Below the pieces are notes generated by a model that saw only the letters and a list, made by a program, of their open reading frames with translations, made no database searches and had not been told where the DNA came from. The translations under genes and the position numbers were made by a program. Of a DNA stretch of 64,000 nt, positions 53,770-61,202 are shown piece after piece (the stretch's first letter is position 1; the number at the start of each line of letters is the position of its first letter). This stretch comes from Convolutriloba macropyga (taxonomy: Eukaryota), in the NCBI RefSeq assembly GCF_964194025.1, contig NC_134474.1:44888001-44952000 (forward strand). The letters are read 5' to 3'.

Positions 53770-54093
53770 CACTATAAGTAACAAAATTGCACGTGCTATG
53801 AAATTGAGTTGCTGAATTGATGGATTCTTAAACCTGAAAATTGAGTAGTTTTTTTTTTCAATAAAATTTACACACCTTGGTTACCATCTGTTTCGTGGAG
53901 TGCAAGTGGAGTGTAGTTTATTTTGGGTCTACGGGGGCTAACCGAAGTGCTTATCAGTTCCCCGGTGAGATCGTACCTATTCTTTGTCCAAGTTTTTGGG
54001 GTGTTCTCTCCCCCCCCAAAGTTTTCTGGGGCGGTTTGCCTGTGAAAACAACTGAAACTATTCCCCGACGCCCATTTTTATGCAATTCTCAAG

Positions 54094-55023
54094 ATGACAA
54101 AAAACAAAAAAGCGAAACCTAATGCGCATATCAGTTTATTAGATTTTCCCTGCGGATCCTGTCAGAAAAATTGTGATAGCTTTTGTGTACAGTGTTCAAA
54201 CTGCAAAACGTGGTTTCATGATTCGTGCTCAAATTTACCAAACAGCATTTTGGCAGTTTTGGGAAAAATTAAGGGCATAAGTTGGTCTTGTGAAAATTGC
54301 GAGCAAAAAGGTCAACTTCCAGTAACAAAAGCCGATATTGATTCTTTGTCGGATAATATTCATTCACTTAATGCACAAATTCAACAAGAATTGTCTGAAA
54401 TCAGAAATGATATTTACCAATTGAAACAAAACTCTTGCGAAGCTAAAATTGAGCCGCTTCAAAATGAAATCAAAGACTCAAAGAGCAGCGTGGGTTCTCT
54501 GAAGCAAAATAGCCAACCAAAACCTCAATATAATCAACAATCGGAAAACCACATGAGCGACAAATTAATAATTTTTGGAATACAGGAGAATCAAGACCAG
54601 ATTTCGAGAATTGAAGCAATGAATACAGACAAAAAACAAGTAGCATCTATTTTCGAACAAATAATGGGACTGAAAGATGTCGTAATTCATGACTGCTTCA
54701 GATTAGGGAAACTCGTTAACGAGAAGAACAGGCCTGTTGTAGTGAAAATTGATAATGCGTGGACTTTCAGAACGATCTTCTTATCTGTTTCAAAGTTAAA
54801 AGGTTCGGGATTTGTCATAAAAAAATTTCTCTCCGTTGAGGACTACAAAAAGGAAAAAACACTATATCAGCGGAAGACAAATCTGATAAACAATTTTGGC
54901 TACGAAAAACACAGTTTCTCCATTAAAGGTCAAGAGTTATTTTATAAGGGAAAAGTTATCGCTGAAAATTTTAACCCGAATAGTATGCAATCCTCTACAG
55001 ATCAAAACGTCCATACGTCCTGA
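54094..55023 (+). CDS. LINE ORF1 (PHD finger, coiled coil, L1-transposase-like RRM region)
   Basis: CGSC...CVQCSNCKTWFHDSC...WSCENC (C4HC3); LIIFGIQE; FRLGK...RPVVVK. Confidence 0.92.
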   Translation: MTKNKKAKPNAHISLLDFPCGSCQKNCDSFCVQCSNCKTWFHDSCSNLPNSILAVLGKIKGISWSCENCEQKGQLPVTKADIDSLSDNIHSLNAQIQQELSEIRNDIYQLKQNSCEAKIEPLQNEIKDSKSSVGSLKQNSQPKPQYNQQSENHMSDKLIIFGIQENQDQISRIEAMNTDKKQVASIFEQIMGLKDVVIHDCFRLGKLVNEKNRPVVVKIDNAWTFRTIFLSVSKLKGSGFVIKKFLSVEDYKKEKTLYQRKTNLINNFGYEKHSFSIKGQELFYKGKVIAENFNPNSMQSSTDQNVHTS

Positions 55024-57864
55024 CTACCAGCCATCAAAATCTCGTCCTTAAACTGTAGATCCTTGCTGAATATTAATCGAAGAATTAGCCTTGATATTCA
55101 TCTCAAAGTTCATAAACCCGATATTATCTGTCTGAGTGAAACGTGGTTTGATTCGAGAGTTGATGACACATGTGTCTTCATTTCAAACTTTTATAGCGTA
55201 GTTAGTAGAATTGATCGATGTAATGGTAGCCATGGAGGAGTTGTTATTGGTATGAAAACAGAAATTAATGTTCACAGTGAAACAATCCAAGCTAAATCTC
55301 CTGTTGACTTTGCAACTTCGGCTCTCTTTTGCAATTTAGAGCAGGCAATAATTGTTATAAATGTTTACAATCCACCTCATGAATCGCCTTATCGCTTAGA
55401 AGTAAAATTGTTTGATACTTACTTACACGAAATTATTAGTTCGGCTCATGAAAAAGTTCTTAAAAACAATTTAGATCTCATCAATGTGCTCATAGTAGGT
55501 GATGTAAACCTTCCTGGAATTGATTGGAGTCTCCTGAGCAGTAATAATGCCTATGAAAAAACATTTTGCCAGGTTTTTCGGAAATACGGATTTTGCTCTC
55601 TCATAGAGGACAAAAACGTTGAAAATGATTGCTTTCTTGCGGTTTTCCCTGACACTATTTCTTTTGCTCATATCCATGCAACGTTTTCCGATCACCCAAT
55701 GATTAGCGCTGAAGTAAATTTTTCTAGCAGCCAGGTTGAGAAATCAAAATCAGTTTATTCTTTCCGAAAAGCGAATCTTCCCAAAATTGCTGAAAGATTC
55801 AGTTACTTTGATGCCTCAGCTGGAGATATAAACCACACACTTCAACATTTTTATGATGAAATCAACTTTTGCTGTATGGCCTTTATTCCTCGGAAAACGA
55901 GAAGGCGAAGGGAAGCTCCTTACTACTTTTCGTCTCATTCCATTCACGCAGAAAATGTTCTAAATACAGCTCGACGACGTCAAAAAGATAAGAACATAAT
56001 TGAAAGGCTTGAAAAGAATTTAGCTGATTCACTTTAACTAGATAAGACAGTATATCTGAACTCTTTCGCAGGTTTAACTCTGACAGAAGTTTTTCAAAAT
56101 CTTAAGAGCTTTCGTCGTATTCCTGATCTGCCCACTAAGATGAAGTTTGCTGGAAACAGTATTTCTGGACCGTTGAAAATTGCCAATGCTTTCAATCAAC
56201 ATTTTGCATCTGTTTTCAGAGAGGATACGAGCCCTCTTTCAGTGCCACTCGCTTCAGCAGACCCCACAATTTGTCTAGAAGATATGTATTTCACTAACAG
56301 TGAAGTAAAATCAATGATCTTTAGTTGTCATTCGGGTTCTGAGTCCTACGATAAATTGCAGCCAATCTTATTGAAAACGTTTTCACCTGCCATTGTCCCA
56401 GTTGTTACTGAGATATTTAACAAAATTATAATTCAGCAAGAATTTCCAAAGAGCTGGAAGAAAGCAATAATTAAACCCCTGCATAAAAAAGAGTCGAGAA
56501 TTGACATAGAAAATTACAGACCAGTGTCAATGTTGTGCGCGCTTTCCCTAATTTTCGAGAAATTACTGTATAGAAAATTTAGGGATCGTTTATGGAAAAA
56601 TTTAGACAATCGCCAGCACGGTTTCAGGACCAAGCATTCTACTATCACTCAATTGATCCAGTATTGTGAAAAAATTTTTCGTTGTTTGAATGCTAAAGAG
56701 TCTGCTTTAAGCGTTTATCTCGATATTGCAAAAGCGTTCGATACAATTAATCACAATGCAATTTTGTTGAAGCTTACGCATTTTGGATTTGATAACCAAT
56801 TTCTCAAGTTTTTTGCAGATTATTTGTCAAATAGAACGCAGTGCGTGTTTGTTAAAGATGATTATTCGTCAGAGTTAGCTGTTACGAGTGGTGGTCCACA
56901 GGGTTCAGTGTTTGCGGTTTTTATGTTTGCTGTGTACATTAATGACCTTCCATCTCTAATGGAGAACAGCACATATCTTTTCGCCGATGACACAAAAATT
57001 TTTGGAAGTCAAATGAATTTATTTTCACTACAAAATGATTTAAACAAAGCAATTAAATGGTCAAAAGAAAACAGAATGCAATTCAACAATGCAAAGTTTG
57101 AAGCTATATGTTTTGATGTAAAAAAGTTAGATCAGTGTAGTGTCCACTTGTATGCAGACGATACAGAAATTACATGCAAATCTTCGGTGAATGATCTTGG
57201 TGTAGTAATTACTAATAACTTGAAATGGGACAGTCATATCAATCAGCGGCTGTCAAAGGCACAACAAAAGCTTTTTTTCTTGAAGAGAAACGTTCCCTTT
57301 TCTACAAATACGAAAGTAAAAGTAAGTTTATACAAAAGTTACATTTTATCAATTCTCCTGTACGCGTCAAATGTATGGTTCTCGAATTGGCCAAATTGCA
57401 GAAAACTCGAAAAGATGCAAAGACGAGCGCTCAAGTGGGCTTTGAATAAGAAATTTTTTACAGATAGTGACTACAATCAGAGCCTCATTTACAACAATTT
57501 GTTGCCGATCAGTTTTCTTTTGGTTCGAAATGATCTTCTTATGCTGAACAAAATTTACAACTGTGATACTGCCCTTAAGTTTGATGATTATTGGAAAGTT
57601 TTCAAGGGACCACGCAGTAACCGTTCTGCAGCAAAACAATTTTTGAAGACCAATTTTAATTGGACGAAATCAGTCAAATTCGAAGAGTATTTTGTCTTGA
57701 GAGTTGTGAAATATGCAAATGTTCTCTCTCAGCGAAATGACATCTCAACTTTTGACTGGACATGTCCAACAGTGTTATTTCGGAAACAGCTGAACTCGCT
57801 GTTGAAATTAAAGGCTTTGAACTTTAAATACTATCAGTATCCTGTTAATTGGTCCTGTTTCTAA
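55024..57864 (+). CDS. LINE ORF2 (AP endonuclease plus reverse transcriptase), one internal TAA at 56035-56037
   Basis: In frame with ORF1. Motifs ISSLNCRSL, ICLSETW, GDVN, SDHP (APE); NYRPVS, QHGFR, LDIAKAFD, PQGS, FADD (RT). Confidence 0.92.
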
Positions 57865-58670
57865 TTAGTTAACAAAGTGATTCCCGCATCGCGGGTACCA
57901 AGTCAATTTAATAATAATAATAATAATAATTGTTTTTAACTTTGATTTTAAAATTCTGTACGACTGTTTTTCAACTTATTGCAAGTAGGCCGCTTGTTGA
58001 TTGAACCGGCTACGCTGTTGTGTTCTACATCCAAGTAAACTTTATATAAATTGTTGCTTTTAAGAAATGAATCAAATAATGTATGACAGAAATGTTGCGT
58101 CAATAAGTTTTTCTGATGAACGTTTTCTGCATTATACTGTTTACGCTAAAAAGTTATGAATTTTCCTCCTGAGAAATAAAACTTGAAAATTTTCACATAG
58201 TTTCGTTTGTTTTCAAATGAAAACTTTTTTACTGATGTTGTTTTCAATTCTTCCACTAATTTCAAAAAAAGTTTTTAACGTTGCGTCATTGACTCAGTCA
58301 AAGAAACGAGTTTGAGACATAATTTCACTGGGCAAATTAAAAATATACTGGATTAATTTCTGACTAAAAACATTTATGTTTAAAAAATTTCTAAATAAGT
58401 CTTGCTCGATGTATACATTTTACTGATAATGGCCCCAAAAAGCTTCTCAAAGGAAAACTTCCTGAACTCATTGAAAAGGCTTGTCACTATTAGAGCGCAA
58501 CTTTACCGAACAACTGAAATTGAGCAGGCTGACACAATTTGTTATTAATTATTCAATACCATCGTTATCCTATTTTTTACATTGGATGCGTTTGTGCACT
58601 TGTTGGCCTATCAAAGAATACTTTTAGCCCATATTATAGTTGTTATTATCATCCGATGTCTTACGCGCTT

Positions 58671-61035
58671 TTATTATTATTATTACTAATAAGTTGACTT
58701 GATACCCCCGATACGGGAATCACTTTGTTAATTGATTAAAAGAACAGGACCAATTTACAGTATACTGATAGTACTTAAAATTGACAGCCTTTAATTTCAA
58801 ACGAGAGTTCAACTGTTTTCGAAATAACACTGTTGGACATGTTCACTCAAAAGTTGAGATGTCATTTTGCTGGTAAGAACATTTGCAAATCTCACAACTC
58901 TCAAAACAAAATAATCTTCCAATTGGACTAATTTTGTCCAATTCAAATTTGTCCCCAAAAACTGTTGTGCTACAGAACGGTTAATGCATGGTCACCTAAA
59001 AACTTTCCAACAAAATCAAACTTAAGGGCAGTAACAGAGTTGCAAATTTTGATCAGCATAAGAAGATCATTTTGAACCAAAAGAAAACTGATTGGCAACA
59101 AAATGTGGTAAATGAGGCTCTGATTGTAGTAACTATCGGTAAAAAATATCTCATTCAAAGCCCACTTAAGCTCTCGTCTTTGCATTTTTTCTAGTTTTCT
59201 GCAACTTGACCATTTTGAGAACCATACACTTGACGCGTAAAGGAGAATTGATATTATATAATTTTGGTATAAACTTACTTTTACTTTGGTATGTGCAGAA
59301 AAGTGAACGTTTTTATTCATGAAAAAAATTTTCTGTTGTGCCTTCGATAGCTGCTGATTGATATGACTGACCCATTTCAACTTATTAGTTACAATTATAC
59401 CAAGATCATCCACCGAAGATTTATGAGTAATTTTTGTATCATATGCATACAAGTGGACACTACACTGTTCTGTTTTGCCACTTTGAATTCCAACCTGTTT
59501 TTTTTAATCATTTGATAAACTTGTTTACATCATTTTGTAGCAAAAATATAACCATTTGACTTTCAATAACTTTTGTGTCATCGTCAGAAAAGAAATGCGC
59601 TGTTCTTCATCAGAGATGGAAGGTCGATAGTGTACACAGCGGACTTAAAAACCGCAAACACTGAACGCTTTGGACCACCACTAGTAACAGTTAACTCTGA
59701 CGAATACTCATCTTTAGCACATACGCACTATGTTCTCTTAGATAAATAATATGCAAAAAACTTGAGAACTTTGTTTTCCGATCCAAAATGCATTAGCTGC
59801 AACAAAATTGCATTGTGATTCATTGTATCGAAAGCCTTTGCAGTATCGAGATAAATGCTTTTGCAAATTCTGTAGCATTTAAACAACGAAAGCTTTTGCC
59901 ACAGTACTCGAGCATTTGAGTGATTGTAGAAAGCTTGGTCCTATAACCTTGCTGGCGTTTGTCTAAATTTTTCAATAAACGATCCTTAAAATTCTTCTAC
60001 AAAAATTTCTCGAAAAATAAGGAATGCGCGCACAAAATTGGCACTGGTCTGAAATTTTTTATGTCAGTTCTCGACTGCTTTTTATGCATAGGTTTTATTG
60101 TTTTCTTCCTGCTCTTTAGAAACTCTTGCTCAACGATATTTTTTTTAAATATCTCAGTTACAACTGGAACAATGGCAGCTGAAAAAGTTTTCAATAAAAT
60201 TGGCTGCAATTCATCATATGACTCAGTACCCGAATGACAACTTAGGATCATTGACTTCACTTCAATTTTAAATAGCTTTTACATATCTTTCAGGTAAAAT
60301 ACATATCTTTTAGACAAATTGTGGGGTCTGTTGAAGCAAGAGGCACTGAAAGAGGGCCCGTGTTTTCTTTGAAAACAGATGCGAAAAATTGATTGAAAAA
60401 ACTGGCAATTTTCAACGATCCAGTAATAATGTTTCCACCAAAGTTCATCTTAGTGGCCAGATTTGGAATGAGATGACAGCTCTTAAATTTTTTTGAAACG
60501 TTTTTGTCAAAGTGAAACCTGCAAAGAAATTCAGATATACTGTTTTATTTAATTCAAGTGAAGCAGCTAATTTTTTCTCAAGTCTTTCAATTATGTTTTT
60601 ATCGATGTTTCTAACGTCGTATGGCTGTATTTAAAAAACTCTCTGCGTAAATAGAACGAGACAAAATGTAACAGGGAGCTTCCTTTCGCCTTCTAGTTTT
60701 CCGAGGAATAAAGGCCATACAAGTTTAGTTTATATCTGAAGCTGAGGCACCAACGTAACTGAATCTTTCAGCAAATTTGGGAAGATCCGCGTTTCGGAAA
60801 GAGTAAATTGATTTTGAATGCTCAACCTGGCTGCTCGAAAAATTCACTTCAGCGCTAATCATTGGGTTATTGGAAAATGTCGAGTGGATCTGAGCAAAAG
60901 ATTTAGTGTCAGAAAAATTGCAAGTATTCAATCATTTTTTTATGATTTAGTCCTCTATGAGAGAACAAAAGTCGTTTTTTTGAAAAACCTGGCAAAATCT
61001 GGCAGGATCCGCAGGGAAAATTTAAAAAACTGATG
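58671..61035 (-). mobile_element. older degenerate copy of the same LINE family, internally deleted
   Basis: Same 3' end and (AAT)n tail on the minus strand; ORF fragments align to ORF2. Near 60998 it jumps from the ~55565 equivalent to the ~54165 equivalent. Confidence 0.93.
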
Positions 61036-61202
61036 TGGGAAACTTGAGAAAAAAATTACGTATCCGTTTCCGTTTTTCCTATTTTTCATAGCAACTAAAC
61101 TCCAGGGTAAAGCTGTCATATGCAATATTTTCACGGCAGAGAGTGGATGAGAAGCTTTTGCTTATCATAATTTATCAAGGTTAATGAATCAAGGCTAAAT
61201 AT

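What the first reader, a model, noticed from the sequence alone, without database searches (positions are those of the whole stretch)
55000..55070. LINE ORF1 and ORF2 joined in frame by a single TGA-CTA: probable programmed stop-codon readthrough
Seen: ...ACG TCC TGA CTA CCA GCC ATC AAA ATC TCG TCC TTA AAC TGT AGA TCC TTG. ORF2 starts at the codon right after the ORF1 stop, in the same frame. The first endonuclease motif (ISSLNCRSL) comes 5 codons later, and the first in-frame ATG (GMKTE) lies downstream of the LSETW motif. AUG initiation would therefore truncate the endonuclease. Established: UGA-CUA is a known leaky-stop context (alphavirus nsP3/4, several animal genes), whereas L1 and SART1 ORF2 use reinitiation or coupling. 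Inference: a Gag-Pol-like ~1250-aa PHD-ORF1-APE-RT fusion made at low ratio by readthrough.
Basis: partly seen in the sequence, partly recalled or inferred. Interest (0 to 1): 0.85.

Follow-up and report, generated by a model that had tools for sequence, protein, structure and literature searches.

The report
LINE clade with conserved leaky stop
A young jumping gene (LINE) in this invertebrate genome joins its two genes in one reading frame through a single UGA-CUA "leaky stop". The same six letters are kept in at least 14 very different sister families, so the enzyme is probably made as a rare fusion to the RNA-binding protein, as retroviruses make Gag-Pol.

Summary
ORF1 (309 codons) ends in TGA at 55021-55023. 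ORF2 (APE endonuclease plus reverse transcriptase, 946 codons) continues in the same frame from CTA at 55024. The first in-frame ATG is codon 77, after two catalytic endonuclease motifs.

- TGA-CTA is identical in 30/30 copies of this family (88-100% identical).
- Seven fetched copies have both ORFs intact around that TGA.
- 77 junctions from this genome fall into 14 families. TGA is kept in 76 and CTA in 76, always in frame with no spacer.
- ORF1 proteins are only 18-29% identical, and the flanking bases are not conserved.
- Nine loci from seven other assemblies show TGA-CTA (6), TGA-CTC (2) or TGG-CTA (1, decayed).

CTA is the element's rarest Leu codon (6.8%), so the constraint acts on the RNA.

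No downstream structure, Rfam match, 2A peptide or in-frame sense TGA was found.

Programmed UGA-CUA readthrough giving a 1256-aa ORF1p-ORF2p fusion is the best explanation (about 0.75). It is untested: no RNA or translation data exist.

The window copy is dead (private TAA at 56035-56037).

Eight other first-reader notes flagged the same junction elsewhere in this genome.

The parts
53785..57935 (+). Full-length copy of a young LINE family, about 4.15 kb. It is 99.3-99.6% identical to other full-length copies in the genome.
   Evidence: The 5' end at 53785-53793 and the 3' end at 57926-57933 are shared by full-length copies. Other copies are 5'-truncated at variable points.
53785..54093 (+). 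5' UTR, about 310 nt. It includes a variable poly-C tract near 54009.
   Evidence: length variants at 54009.
54094..55020 (+). ORF1, 309 codons. It has an N-terminal PHD finger (residues 20-69, 54151-54300), a heptad-rich middle part, and a C-terminal L1-ORF1p-like RRM+CTD (residues about 145-309, 54526-55020).
   Evidence: Pfam PHD E 1.6e-5. The C-terminal profile hits L1 ORF1p chains 2ldy_A (6.4e-5) and 2w7a_A (6.2e-4). The model (pLDDT 82) best matches the human L1 ORF1p trimer 2yko_A, E 5e-6.
55021..55026 (+). TGA-CTA: the ORF1 stop codon plus the first ORF2 codon. This is the proposed readthrough signal.
   Evidence: Identical in 30/30 family copies. TGA in 76/77 and CTA in 76/77 junctions from 14 families. 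It is the only conserved island between unconserved flanks.
55024..57861 (+). ORF2, 946 codons in intact copies. The APE endonuclease begins at about residue 7 and RVT_1 covers residues 488-695 (about 56485-57108). There is no in-frame ATG before codon 77.
56035..56037 (+). Private TAA nonsense codon (GAA in the other copies) that truncates ORF2 of the window copy.
   Evidence: GAA in 28 of the other 29 copies. Only L021 shares TAA.
57862..57864 (+). TAA stop of ORF2.
57865..57935 (+). Short 3' UTR with a small G+C hairpin (57883-57895) followed by an (AAT)n tail (about 57910-57931).
   Evidence: Read directly. Depth falls to single-copy level just beyond.
58671..61037 (-). Second, older copy of a related subfamily (81.6% identical). 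An internal deletion removes the ORF1-ORF2 junction.

Best explanation
This is a recently active APE-type LINE of the L2/CR1 lineage. Its ORF1 protein is of the 'PHD + L1-like coiled coil/RRM/CTD' kind.

ORF1 and ORF2 form one continuous reading frame interrupted only by UGA, which is followed by CUA. Most ribosomes probably stop at UGA and release ORF1p, the abundant RNA-coating protein. A small share, of the order of one to a few per cent by analogy with measured UGA-CUA contexts, would insert an amino acid at UGA and continue. That would make a 1256-aa ORF1p-APE-RT fusion. This fixes a high ORF1p:ORF2p ratio, as Gag:Gag-Pol does. It would also tether the enzyme to the ORF1p-coated RNA that encoded it, through the ORF1p part.

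Shown here: the anatomy, the conservation of the hexamer and the frame, and the lack of any AUG start.

Inferred: that readthrough occurs, its rate, and that the fusion is the active form.
For: 1. The junction is as described, and an AUG start would cut the endonuclease.
2. It is not a private mutation. TGACTACCAG is found in 30/30 copies at 88-100% identity. Seven copies have intact ORF1 + TGA + intact 946-codon ORF2.
3. Deep conservation within the genome. 77 junctions fall into 14 families. TGA is kept in 76 and CTA in 76, all in frame with no spacer. The codons on both sides differ between families, and ORF1 C-terminal domains are 18-29% identical.
4. Conservation outside the genome. Nine loci from seven other assemblies show 6 TGA-CTA, 2 TGA-CTC and 1 TGG-CTA, the last in a decayed copy. 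Three of them have at most 65% DNA identity or no DNA match in this genome.
5. The constraint acts on nucleotides. CTA is the rarest of six Leu codons in the element, 8/117.
6. The linker from the stop to the catalytic Asn varies from 9 to 16 codons. Over 154 codons in 14 families it has 0 stops in frame 0, against 16 and 4 in the other frames. Eleven of the 14 have no in-frame ATG there.
7. TGA is a genuine stop here. The 1255 sense codons hold 16 TGG and 0 in-frame TGA, against 34 and 60 TGA out of frame.
8. UGA-CUA is an experimentally established readthrough context. Alone it gives 1.5%, rising to about 31% with CUAG plus flanks, and 12 nt on the 3' side suffice (PMC4132726).
9. N-terminal additions to APE-RT are tolerated in this lineage. 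Relatives encode single-ORF 2A-PHD-APE-RT proteins (PMC3708506).
10. A neighbouring CR1-like element with an esterase ORF1 has the ordinary layout: a 50-nt spacer, another frame and its own ATG. The junction is therefore specific to this clade.
Against: - There is no direct evidence of translation. No RNA run holds the element, and the four runs found look like DNA unitigs.
- In this family the base after CUA is C, not the G of the strongest CUAG motif. Only about a third of families have G.
- No stimulatory structure lies downstream. MFE z-scores are mostly above 0.
- Three of 14 families have an in-frame AUG one to seven codons before the catalytic Asn, so an alternative start is possible there.
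- Human L1 shows that a LINE ORF2 can be started without its AUG after ORF1 termination (Alisch et al. 2006, cited in PMC5972666).
- The element has no protease, so the enzyme would have to work as a fusion. That is unproven.
Confidence: 0.75

Rival explanations
1. Termination-reinitiation, or another AUG-independent start. Ribosomes finish ORF1 at UGA and a fraction resume at or just after the next codon, giving free ORF2p and no fusion, as proposed for human L1.
For: - There is precedent in LINEs: L1 ORF2 translation does not depend on its AUG, and SART1 couples ORF1 and ORF2 through UAAUG (PMC5972666, PMC3708506).
- A zero spacer suits coupling.
- Three of 14 families have an in-frame AUG just before the catalytic Asn.
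Against: - This model does not predict strict conservation of UGA over UAA/UAG, nor of CUA. CUA is two changes away from AUG and is the rarest Leu codon.
- There is no AUG in 11 of 14 families.
- There is no downstream structure like that of SART1.
- The frame is open right up to the stop in every family.
Confidence: 0.15
2. The UGA is removed or redefined by another route: A-to-I editing to UGG, selenocysteine insertion, splicing across the stop, or a host genetic code in which UGA is a sense codon.
For: Decayed copies carry TGG at the site (L053, L108), so Trp there is at least a one-step neighbour. One gene caller read the TGA as W.
Against: - There is no local double-stranded structure for ADAR.
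- Rfam finds no SECIS or any other family in the element.
- No conserved splice signals flank the stop, because the flanks are unconserved.
- There are 0 in-frame TGA among 1255 sense codons against 16 TGG. TGA also appears as a disrupting stop in decayed copies.
- All intact copies keep TGA rather than TGG.
Confidence: 0.04
3. ORF2 is not translated from these elements at all. The stop is a tolerated defect and the copies are moved in trans by another LINE.
For: The window copy is itself dead. The genome holds many related families that could supply proteins.
Against: - Seven of the young copies fetched keep an uninterrupted 946-codon ORF2 directly after the TGA. The frame is open through the linker in all families. 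Neither is expected without selection for translation.
- The same arrangement is kept in families as distant as 18-29% ORF1 identity and in other organisms.
Confidence: 0.03

Closest known systems
UGA-CUA(G) stop-codon readthrough signals: alphavirus nsP3/nsP4, and vertebrate OPRL1, OPRK1, AQP4, MAPK10 and MDH1 (Loughran et al. 2014, PMC4132726)
   Same: UGA is followed directly by CUA. The motif is conserved at the nucleotide level while the flanks vary. No downstream structure is needed. The downstream frame is coding.
   Different: - Here the signal lies between the two genes of a LINE, not in a virus replicase or at the end of a host gene.
- The extension is a 946-aa enzyme, not a short tail.
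- The +7 base is C in this family, and G in only some sister families.
- Readthrough has not been measured.
Gag-Pol by stop-codon readthrough in gammaretroviruses (MuLV) and some LTR retrotransposons. This comparison rests on my own knowledge and was not read here.
   Same: The logic is the same. An abundant nucleic-acid-binding structural protein and a rare fusion carrying the reverse transcriptase come from one frame interrupted by one stop.
   Different: MuLV uses UAG plus a pseudoknot, and a protease frees Pol. This element has UGA-CUA, no structure and no protease domain. It also replicates by target-primed reverse transcription.
LINE ORF2 expression by termination-reinitiation: human L1, and SART1 with UAAUG
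   Same: A bicistronic LINE RNA with ORF2 made far more rarely than ORF1. In SART1 the stop and the start are adjacent.
   Different: There is no AUG at or near the stop, no downstream structure, and the frame and the UGA-CUA hexamer are strictly conserved.
L2/CR1-lineage LINEs with type IIC ORF1, that is PHD + Tnp22-like CC-RRM-CTD: L2 subgroup 6 and CR1 subgroup 5 of Metcalfe & Casane 2014 (PMC4120745)
   Same: The ORF1 architecture is the same, and so are the APE-RT ORF2, the 3' hairpin and the microsatellite tail.
   Different: That paper does not mention the ORF1 stop, the frame or readthrough. Assignment to L2 or CR1 by RT phylogeny was not done here.
2A-peptide LINEs of the Rex1, L2, Crack, CR1 and Ingi clades (Odon et al. 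2013, PMC3708506)
   Same: These are the nearest ORF2 relatives by sequence after the PHD-ORF1 elements. They also use translational recoding, and they carry a PHD finger fused N-terminally to APE-RT.
   Different: They have a single ORF with NPGP ribosome skipping. This element has no NPGP and has a separate ORF1 closed by UGA.

Membership tests
UGA-CUA(G) readthrough signal class | The stop codon is UGA. | tested here: met
   TGA in 30/30 family copies, in 76/77 junctions from 14 families, and in 8/9 loci from other assemblies.
UGA-CUA(G) readthrough signal class | CUA lies immediately 3' of the stop and is conserved at the nucleotide level. | tested here: met
   CTA in 76/77 junctions. It is the rarest Leu codon of the element, 6.8%. 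Two outside loci have CTC instead.
UGA-CUA(G) readthrough signal class | G at +7, completing the full CUAG motif. | tested here: not met
   This family has CUA-C. About a third of sister families have CUA-G. PMC4132726 reports that UGA-CUA alone still gives 1.5%.
UGA-CUA(G) readthrough signal class | The downstream frame is open and coding from the stop onward. | tested here: met
   There are 0 stops in frame 0 over 154 linker codons in 14 families, against 16 and 4 in the other frames. The APE domain starts at about residue 7.
UGA-CUA(G) readthrough signal class | Measured readthrough product. | not testable with these tools
   No RNA, ribosome-profiling or proteome data were available.
APE-type LINE, L2/CR1 lineage, ORF1 type IIC | ORF2 has an APE endonuclease and a reverse transcriptase. 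| tested here: met
   RVT_1 scores 85.7-89.3 bits. Exo_endo_phos and Exo_endo_phos_2 match, just below the curated cut-offs. Homologues carry the same domains.
APE-type LINE, L2/CR1 lineage, ORF1 type IIC | ORF1 has an N-terminal PHD finger and an L1-like RRM+CTD. | tested here: met
   PHD scores 25.2 bits, above the cut-off of 24. The profile hits L1 ORF1p. The model's best structural match is 2yko_A, E 5e-6.
APE-type LINE, L2/CR1 lineage, ORF1 type IIC | Genomic copies are 5'-truncated and share a common 3' end and tail. | tested here: met
   Variable 5' ends, depth rising towards the 3' end, and an (AAT)n tail.
APE-type LINE, L2/CR1 lineage, ORF1 type IIC | Placement inside the L2 or CR1 clade by RT phylogeny with reference elements. 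| not tested
   No reference LINE set was available. The lineage is inferred from ORF1 type and from relatives named in PMC3708506 and PMC4120745.
Termination-reinitiation LINEs (SART1 type) | An AUG overlaps or adjoins the ORF1 stop. | tested here: not met
   No ATG in any frame between the stop and the catalytic Asn in this family, and none in frame in 11 of 14 families.
Termination-reinitiation LINEs (SART1 type) | A stimulatory RNA structure lies next to the stop-start site. | tested here: not met
   MFE z-scores for +1..+60, +1..+120 and -60..-1 are mostly above 0 in 15 representatives.
Gammaretrovirus-type Gag-Pol readthrough | UAG stop with a pseudoknot about 8 nt downstream. | tested here: not met
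   The stop is UGA, there is no stable downstream fold, and Rfam finds nothing.
2A-peptide LINEs | An NPGP skipping motif upstream of APE. | tested here: not met
   No NPGP or NPG in ORF1 or ORF2.

The most novel reading that the evidence does not exclude
A large clade of L2/CR1-lineage LINEs makes its endonuclease-reverse transcriptase only as an ORF1p-ORF2p fusion, through programmed UGA-CUA readthrough. The clade is sizeable: the ORF1 profile finds 5098 protein clusters at E<=1e-3, and the same junction occurs in several organisms. This would be the first Gag-Pol-type expression strategy for non-LTR retrotransposons. It would give a built-in physical basis for cis-preference, because the enzyme is tethered through ORF1p to its own RNA.
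Probability: 0.6. Interest if true: 0.82.

Novelty: new variant of a known kind. Interest (0 to 1): 0.72.

Why it matters
How LINEs translate ORF2 from a bicistronic RNA is a long-standing open question. The known answers are unconventional reinitiation (L1, SART1) and 2A skipping.

This clade appears to use a third route, borrowed in logic from retroviruses: a leaky stop that sets the ORF1p:ORF2p ratio and yields a fusion. The signal is only six bases, is invariant across very diverse families, and needs no structure. That makes the hypothesis directly testable with a short reporter.

If true, it gives:
- a natural system to study ORF1p-ORF2p coupling and cis-preference;
- a new, abundant class of UGA-CUA readthrough sites in invertebrate genomes;
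- a practical rule for annotating these elements, because gene callers now split them or start ORF2 at wrong codons.

Tried and rejected
- Private nonsense mutation in a single ORF: rejected.
- Downstream stimulatory stem-loop or pseudoknot: looked for in 15 representatives, none found. Rfam was empty.
- 2A peptide: absent.
- UGA as a sense codon in the host: rejected, with 0 in-frame TGA against 16 TGG.
- RNA evidence: the only four runs holding the sequence are of unrecorded kind and behave like DNA unitigs of a repeat. They say nothing about expression, editing or splicing. No variant at 55021-55026 appeared among the 40 best-supported differences listed; 168 more were not shown.
- ORF1 word-index search: found only the same family. 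The exhaustive profile search was needed.
- Taxa of the outside assemblies: could not be learned, because no names are attached. One sample, ERZ25071359, carries a family nearly identical to one in this genome, so it is a close relative and not independent.
- L105, an ORF2 homologue from another assembly, has TAA before an ATG-less APE but no recognisable ORF1. It was left uninterpreted.
- Eight literature searches found no paper in the held library describing ORF1-ORF2 readthrough in a LINE. Subscription journals and Repbase notes are not covered, so prior mention cannot be excluded.
Full report
**1. The observation**

- ORF1 runs from ATG 54094 to TGA 55021-55023, 309 codons.
- The next codon, CTA at 55024, opens a frame that reads LPAIKISSLNCRSL... 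and then ...LSETW....
- That frame carries Exo_endo_phos and RVT_1 matches and ends at TAA 57862-57864.
- The first in-frame Met of ORF2 is codon 77. There is no ATG in any frame between the stop and the catalytic Asn codon.
- In an intact sister copy the endonuclease profile match starts at ORF2 residue 10, profile position 4. An AUG start would therefore remove the N-terminal catalytic motifs.

**2. The element**

Comparison with other genomic copies puts the full-length element at about 53785-57935. Its parts are:
- a 5' UTR of about 310 nt;
- ORF1 and ORF2;
- a 70-nt 3' UTR with a small G+C hairpin and an (AAT)n tail.

Many copies are 5'-truncated at different points. Contig depth rises about tenfold towards the 3' end. 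Both are typical of a LINE. Full-length copies are 99.3-99.6% identical to the window copy, so the family is very young.

ORF1p has three parts:
- an N-terminal PHD finger;
- a heptad-rich middle part;
- a C-terminal domain whose profile matches L1 ORF1p RRM chains (2ldy_A 6.4e-5, 2w7a_A 6.2e-4).

The AlphaFold model of that C-terminal domain (pLDDT 82) has the human L1 ORF1p trimer as its best structural match (2yko_A, E 5e-6, RRM+CTD). This is the 'type IIC' ORF1 that Metcalfe & Casane describe for L2 subgroup 6 and CR1 subgroup 5 (PMC4120745).

**3. Is the stop private?**

No.
- A DNA search of the whole genome returned 40 matches. In the 30 fetched loci (88-100% identical) the ten bases TGACTACCAG are identical in every one.
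- By contrast, the TAA at 56035 is GAA in 28 of the 29 other copies. That stop is the private, inactivating mutation of this copy.
- Among 20 longer loci, seven copies have an intact 309-codon ORF1, the TGA, and an uninterrupted 946-codon ORF2.

The functional architecture of the family is therefore ORF1-TGA-ORF2 in one frame with no spacer.

**4. Depth of conservation**

The best ORF2 homologue outside the family is 32% identical and comes from another assembly. It also has a PHD-ORF1 ending in TGA, followed in frame by CTC and an ATG-less endonuclease.

Using that ORF1 as a query in the window's genome gave 146 matches from 1543 candidates. I fetched 52 of them, and 47 gave a readable junction. 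Together with the 30 family copies, the 77 junctions cluster into 14 families at 75% identity or more.
- TGA is present in 76 of 77. The exception is TGG in one decayed copy.
- CTA is present in 76 of 77. The exception is ATA in one decayed copy.
- ORF2 always follows in the same frame, apart from obviously frameshifted relics.
- Anchored on the stop, TGACTA is the only conserved island. The preceding codon differs between families (TCC, TGG, AAC, GAT, CTA, TCA, CAC, TTT...). So does the second ORF2 codon (CCA, AAT, GGT, GAA, AGA, AAC, TCC, ACC, CAA).
- ORF1 C-terminal domains of these families are 18-29% identical to the window's.

Nine loci from seven other assemblies or runs give six TGA-CTA, two TGA-CTC and one TGG-CTA, the last in a truncated copy. 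Three of these loci have at most 65% DNA identity or no DNA match in this genome. One sample clearly comes from a close relative.

The ORF1 profile finds 5098 protein clusters at E<=1e-3 in the 1.84-billion-protein library. Nearly all of the best 150 end where ORF1 ends. The few that run on have W or C at the junction followed by L. Where the DNA was checked, these are a TGG mutant and a TGA read as Trp by the gene caller.

**5. Why this points to readthrough**

- The constraint acts on the RNA, not the protein. CTA is the rarest of the six Leu codons in the element, 8 of 117, yet it is almost the only codon seen at +1.
- The stop is always UGA, never UAA or UAG, although ORF2 ends in TAA.
- The linker between the stop and the catalytic Asn varies in length (9-16 codons) and in sequence. 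Over 154 codons in 14 families it contains no frame-0 stop, against 16 and 4 in the other frames. Eleven of the 14 have no in-frame ATG there. The reading frame is therefore kept open right up to the stop.
- UGA followed by CUA is an experimentally defined leaky context. Loughran et al. report 1.5% for UGA-CUA alone and up to about 31% with CUAG plus flanking codons. They also report a strong preference for UGA and no need for more than 12 nt downstream (PMC4132726).

A reinitiation site predicts none of these nucleotide-level constraints. CUA differs from AUG at two positions.

**6. Rivals**

- Termination-reinitiation or another AUG-independent start remains possible. There is precedent in L1 and SART1, and three families have an AUG just before the Asn. 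I give it about 0.15.
- Editing, selenocysteine, splicing or a variant genetic code are unlikely. There is no local structure and no Rfam match. The flanks are unconserved. The 1255 sense codons hold no in-frame TGA but 16 TGG, with 34 and 60 TGA out of frame.
- Untranslated ORF2 with mobilisation in trans does not fit the many intact 946-codon ORFs.

MFE z-scores for 60 and 120 nt downstream are mostly positive in 15 representatives.

**7. What is known and what is new**

The parts are known:
- the LINE lineage and ORF1 type (PMC4120745);
- the UGA-CUA motif (PMC4132726);
- Gag-Pol readthrough in retroviruses (my own knowledge);
- recoding by 2A peptides in sister LINEs (PMC3708506). Those sister elements appear among the ORF2 homologues as single-ORF 2A-PHD-APE-RT proteins.

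A neighbouring CR1-like element with an esterase ORF1 has the ordinary layout of spacer, other frame and own ATG.

Eight full-text searches found no paper describing readthrough between ORF1 and ORF2 of a LINE. Older or subscription literature and Repbase notes are not covered.

I therefore rate this a new variant of a known kind.

**8. Earlier notes of the scan**

Eight first-reader notes on other windows of this genome report the same TGA-CTA junction. None was shown with a follow-up. They agree with what I measured genome-wide, but they are not independent evidence.

**9. Limits**

- There are no expression or translation data.
- The taxa of the outside assemblies are unknown.
- The clade was not placed by RT phylogeny.
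- Families within one genome share ancestry, so the counts are not independent trials. The argument rests on saturation of the flanks against invariance of six bases.

Noticed in passing
window 56035-56037: A private GAA>TAA nonsense mutation truncates ORF2 of the window copy at codon 338. One other, older copy (L021) has TAA at the same codon, probably independently.
   Followed up: yes
window 58671-61037 (minus strand): A second, tail-to-tail LINE copy of a related subfamily, 81.6% identical. An internal deletion joins ORF1 codon ~25 to mid-APE (element 54167-55562 missing).
   Followed up: partly
window 57883-57931: The 3' end has a 13-nt G+C hairpin followed by (AAT)7. This would suit targeting of, or priming on, AAT microsatellites.
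   Followed up: no
P0003, P0010, P0026, P0036: More distant ORF2 relatives are single-ORF proteins with an N-terminal 2A-like D(V/I)ExNPGP motif, then one or two PHD fingers, then APE-RT. The same lineage thus uses two different recoding devices in different families.
   Followed up: partly
L109:1201-2025, and P0001 and P0002: Automatic gene callers mis-handle these elements. One read the junction TGA as Trp (a table-4-like call). Others start ORF2 at internal TTG or GTG codons, cutting off the catalytic Asn.
   Followed up: yes
window 54009; L001:384-506: The 5' UTR is length-polymorphic between copies. There is a poly-C tract varying by 2-5 C and a 123-bp tandem duplication of 53860-53982 in one copy.
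   Followed up: no
G000:C10:19733533-19736582: Two copies of the family lie about 2.65 kb apart in the same orientation (L047 shows two junctions). This suggests a tandem or segmentally duplicated truncated element.
   Followed up: no
L104:1404-5308 (other assembly): A CR1-like element with an SGNH/esterase-type ORF1. Its ORF2 has its own ATG, 50 nt downstream and in another frame. It served as a contrast to the TGA-CTA clade.
   Followed up: partly
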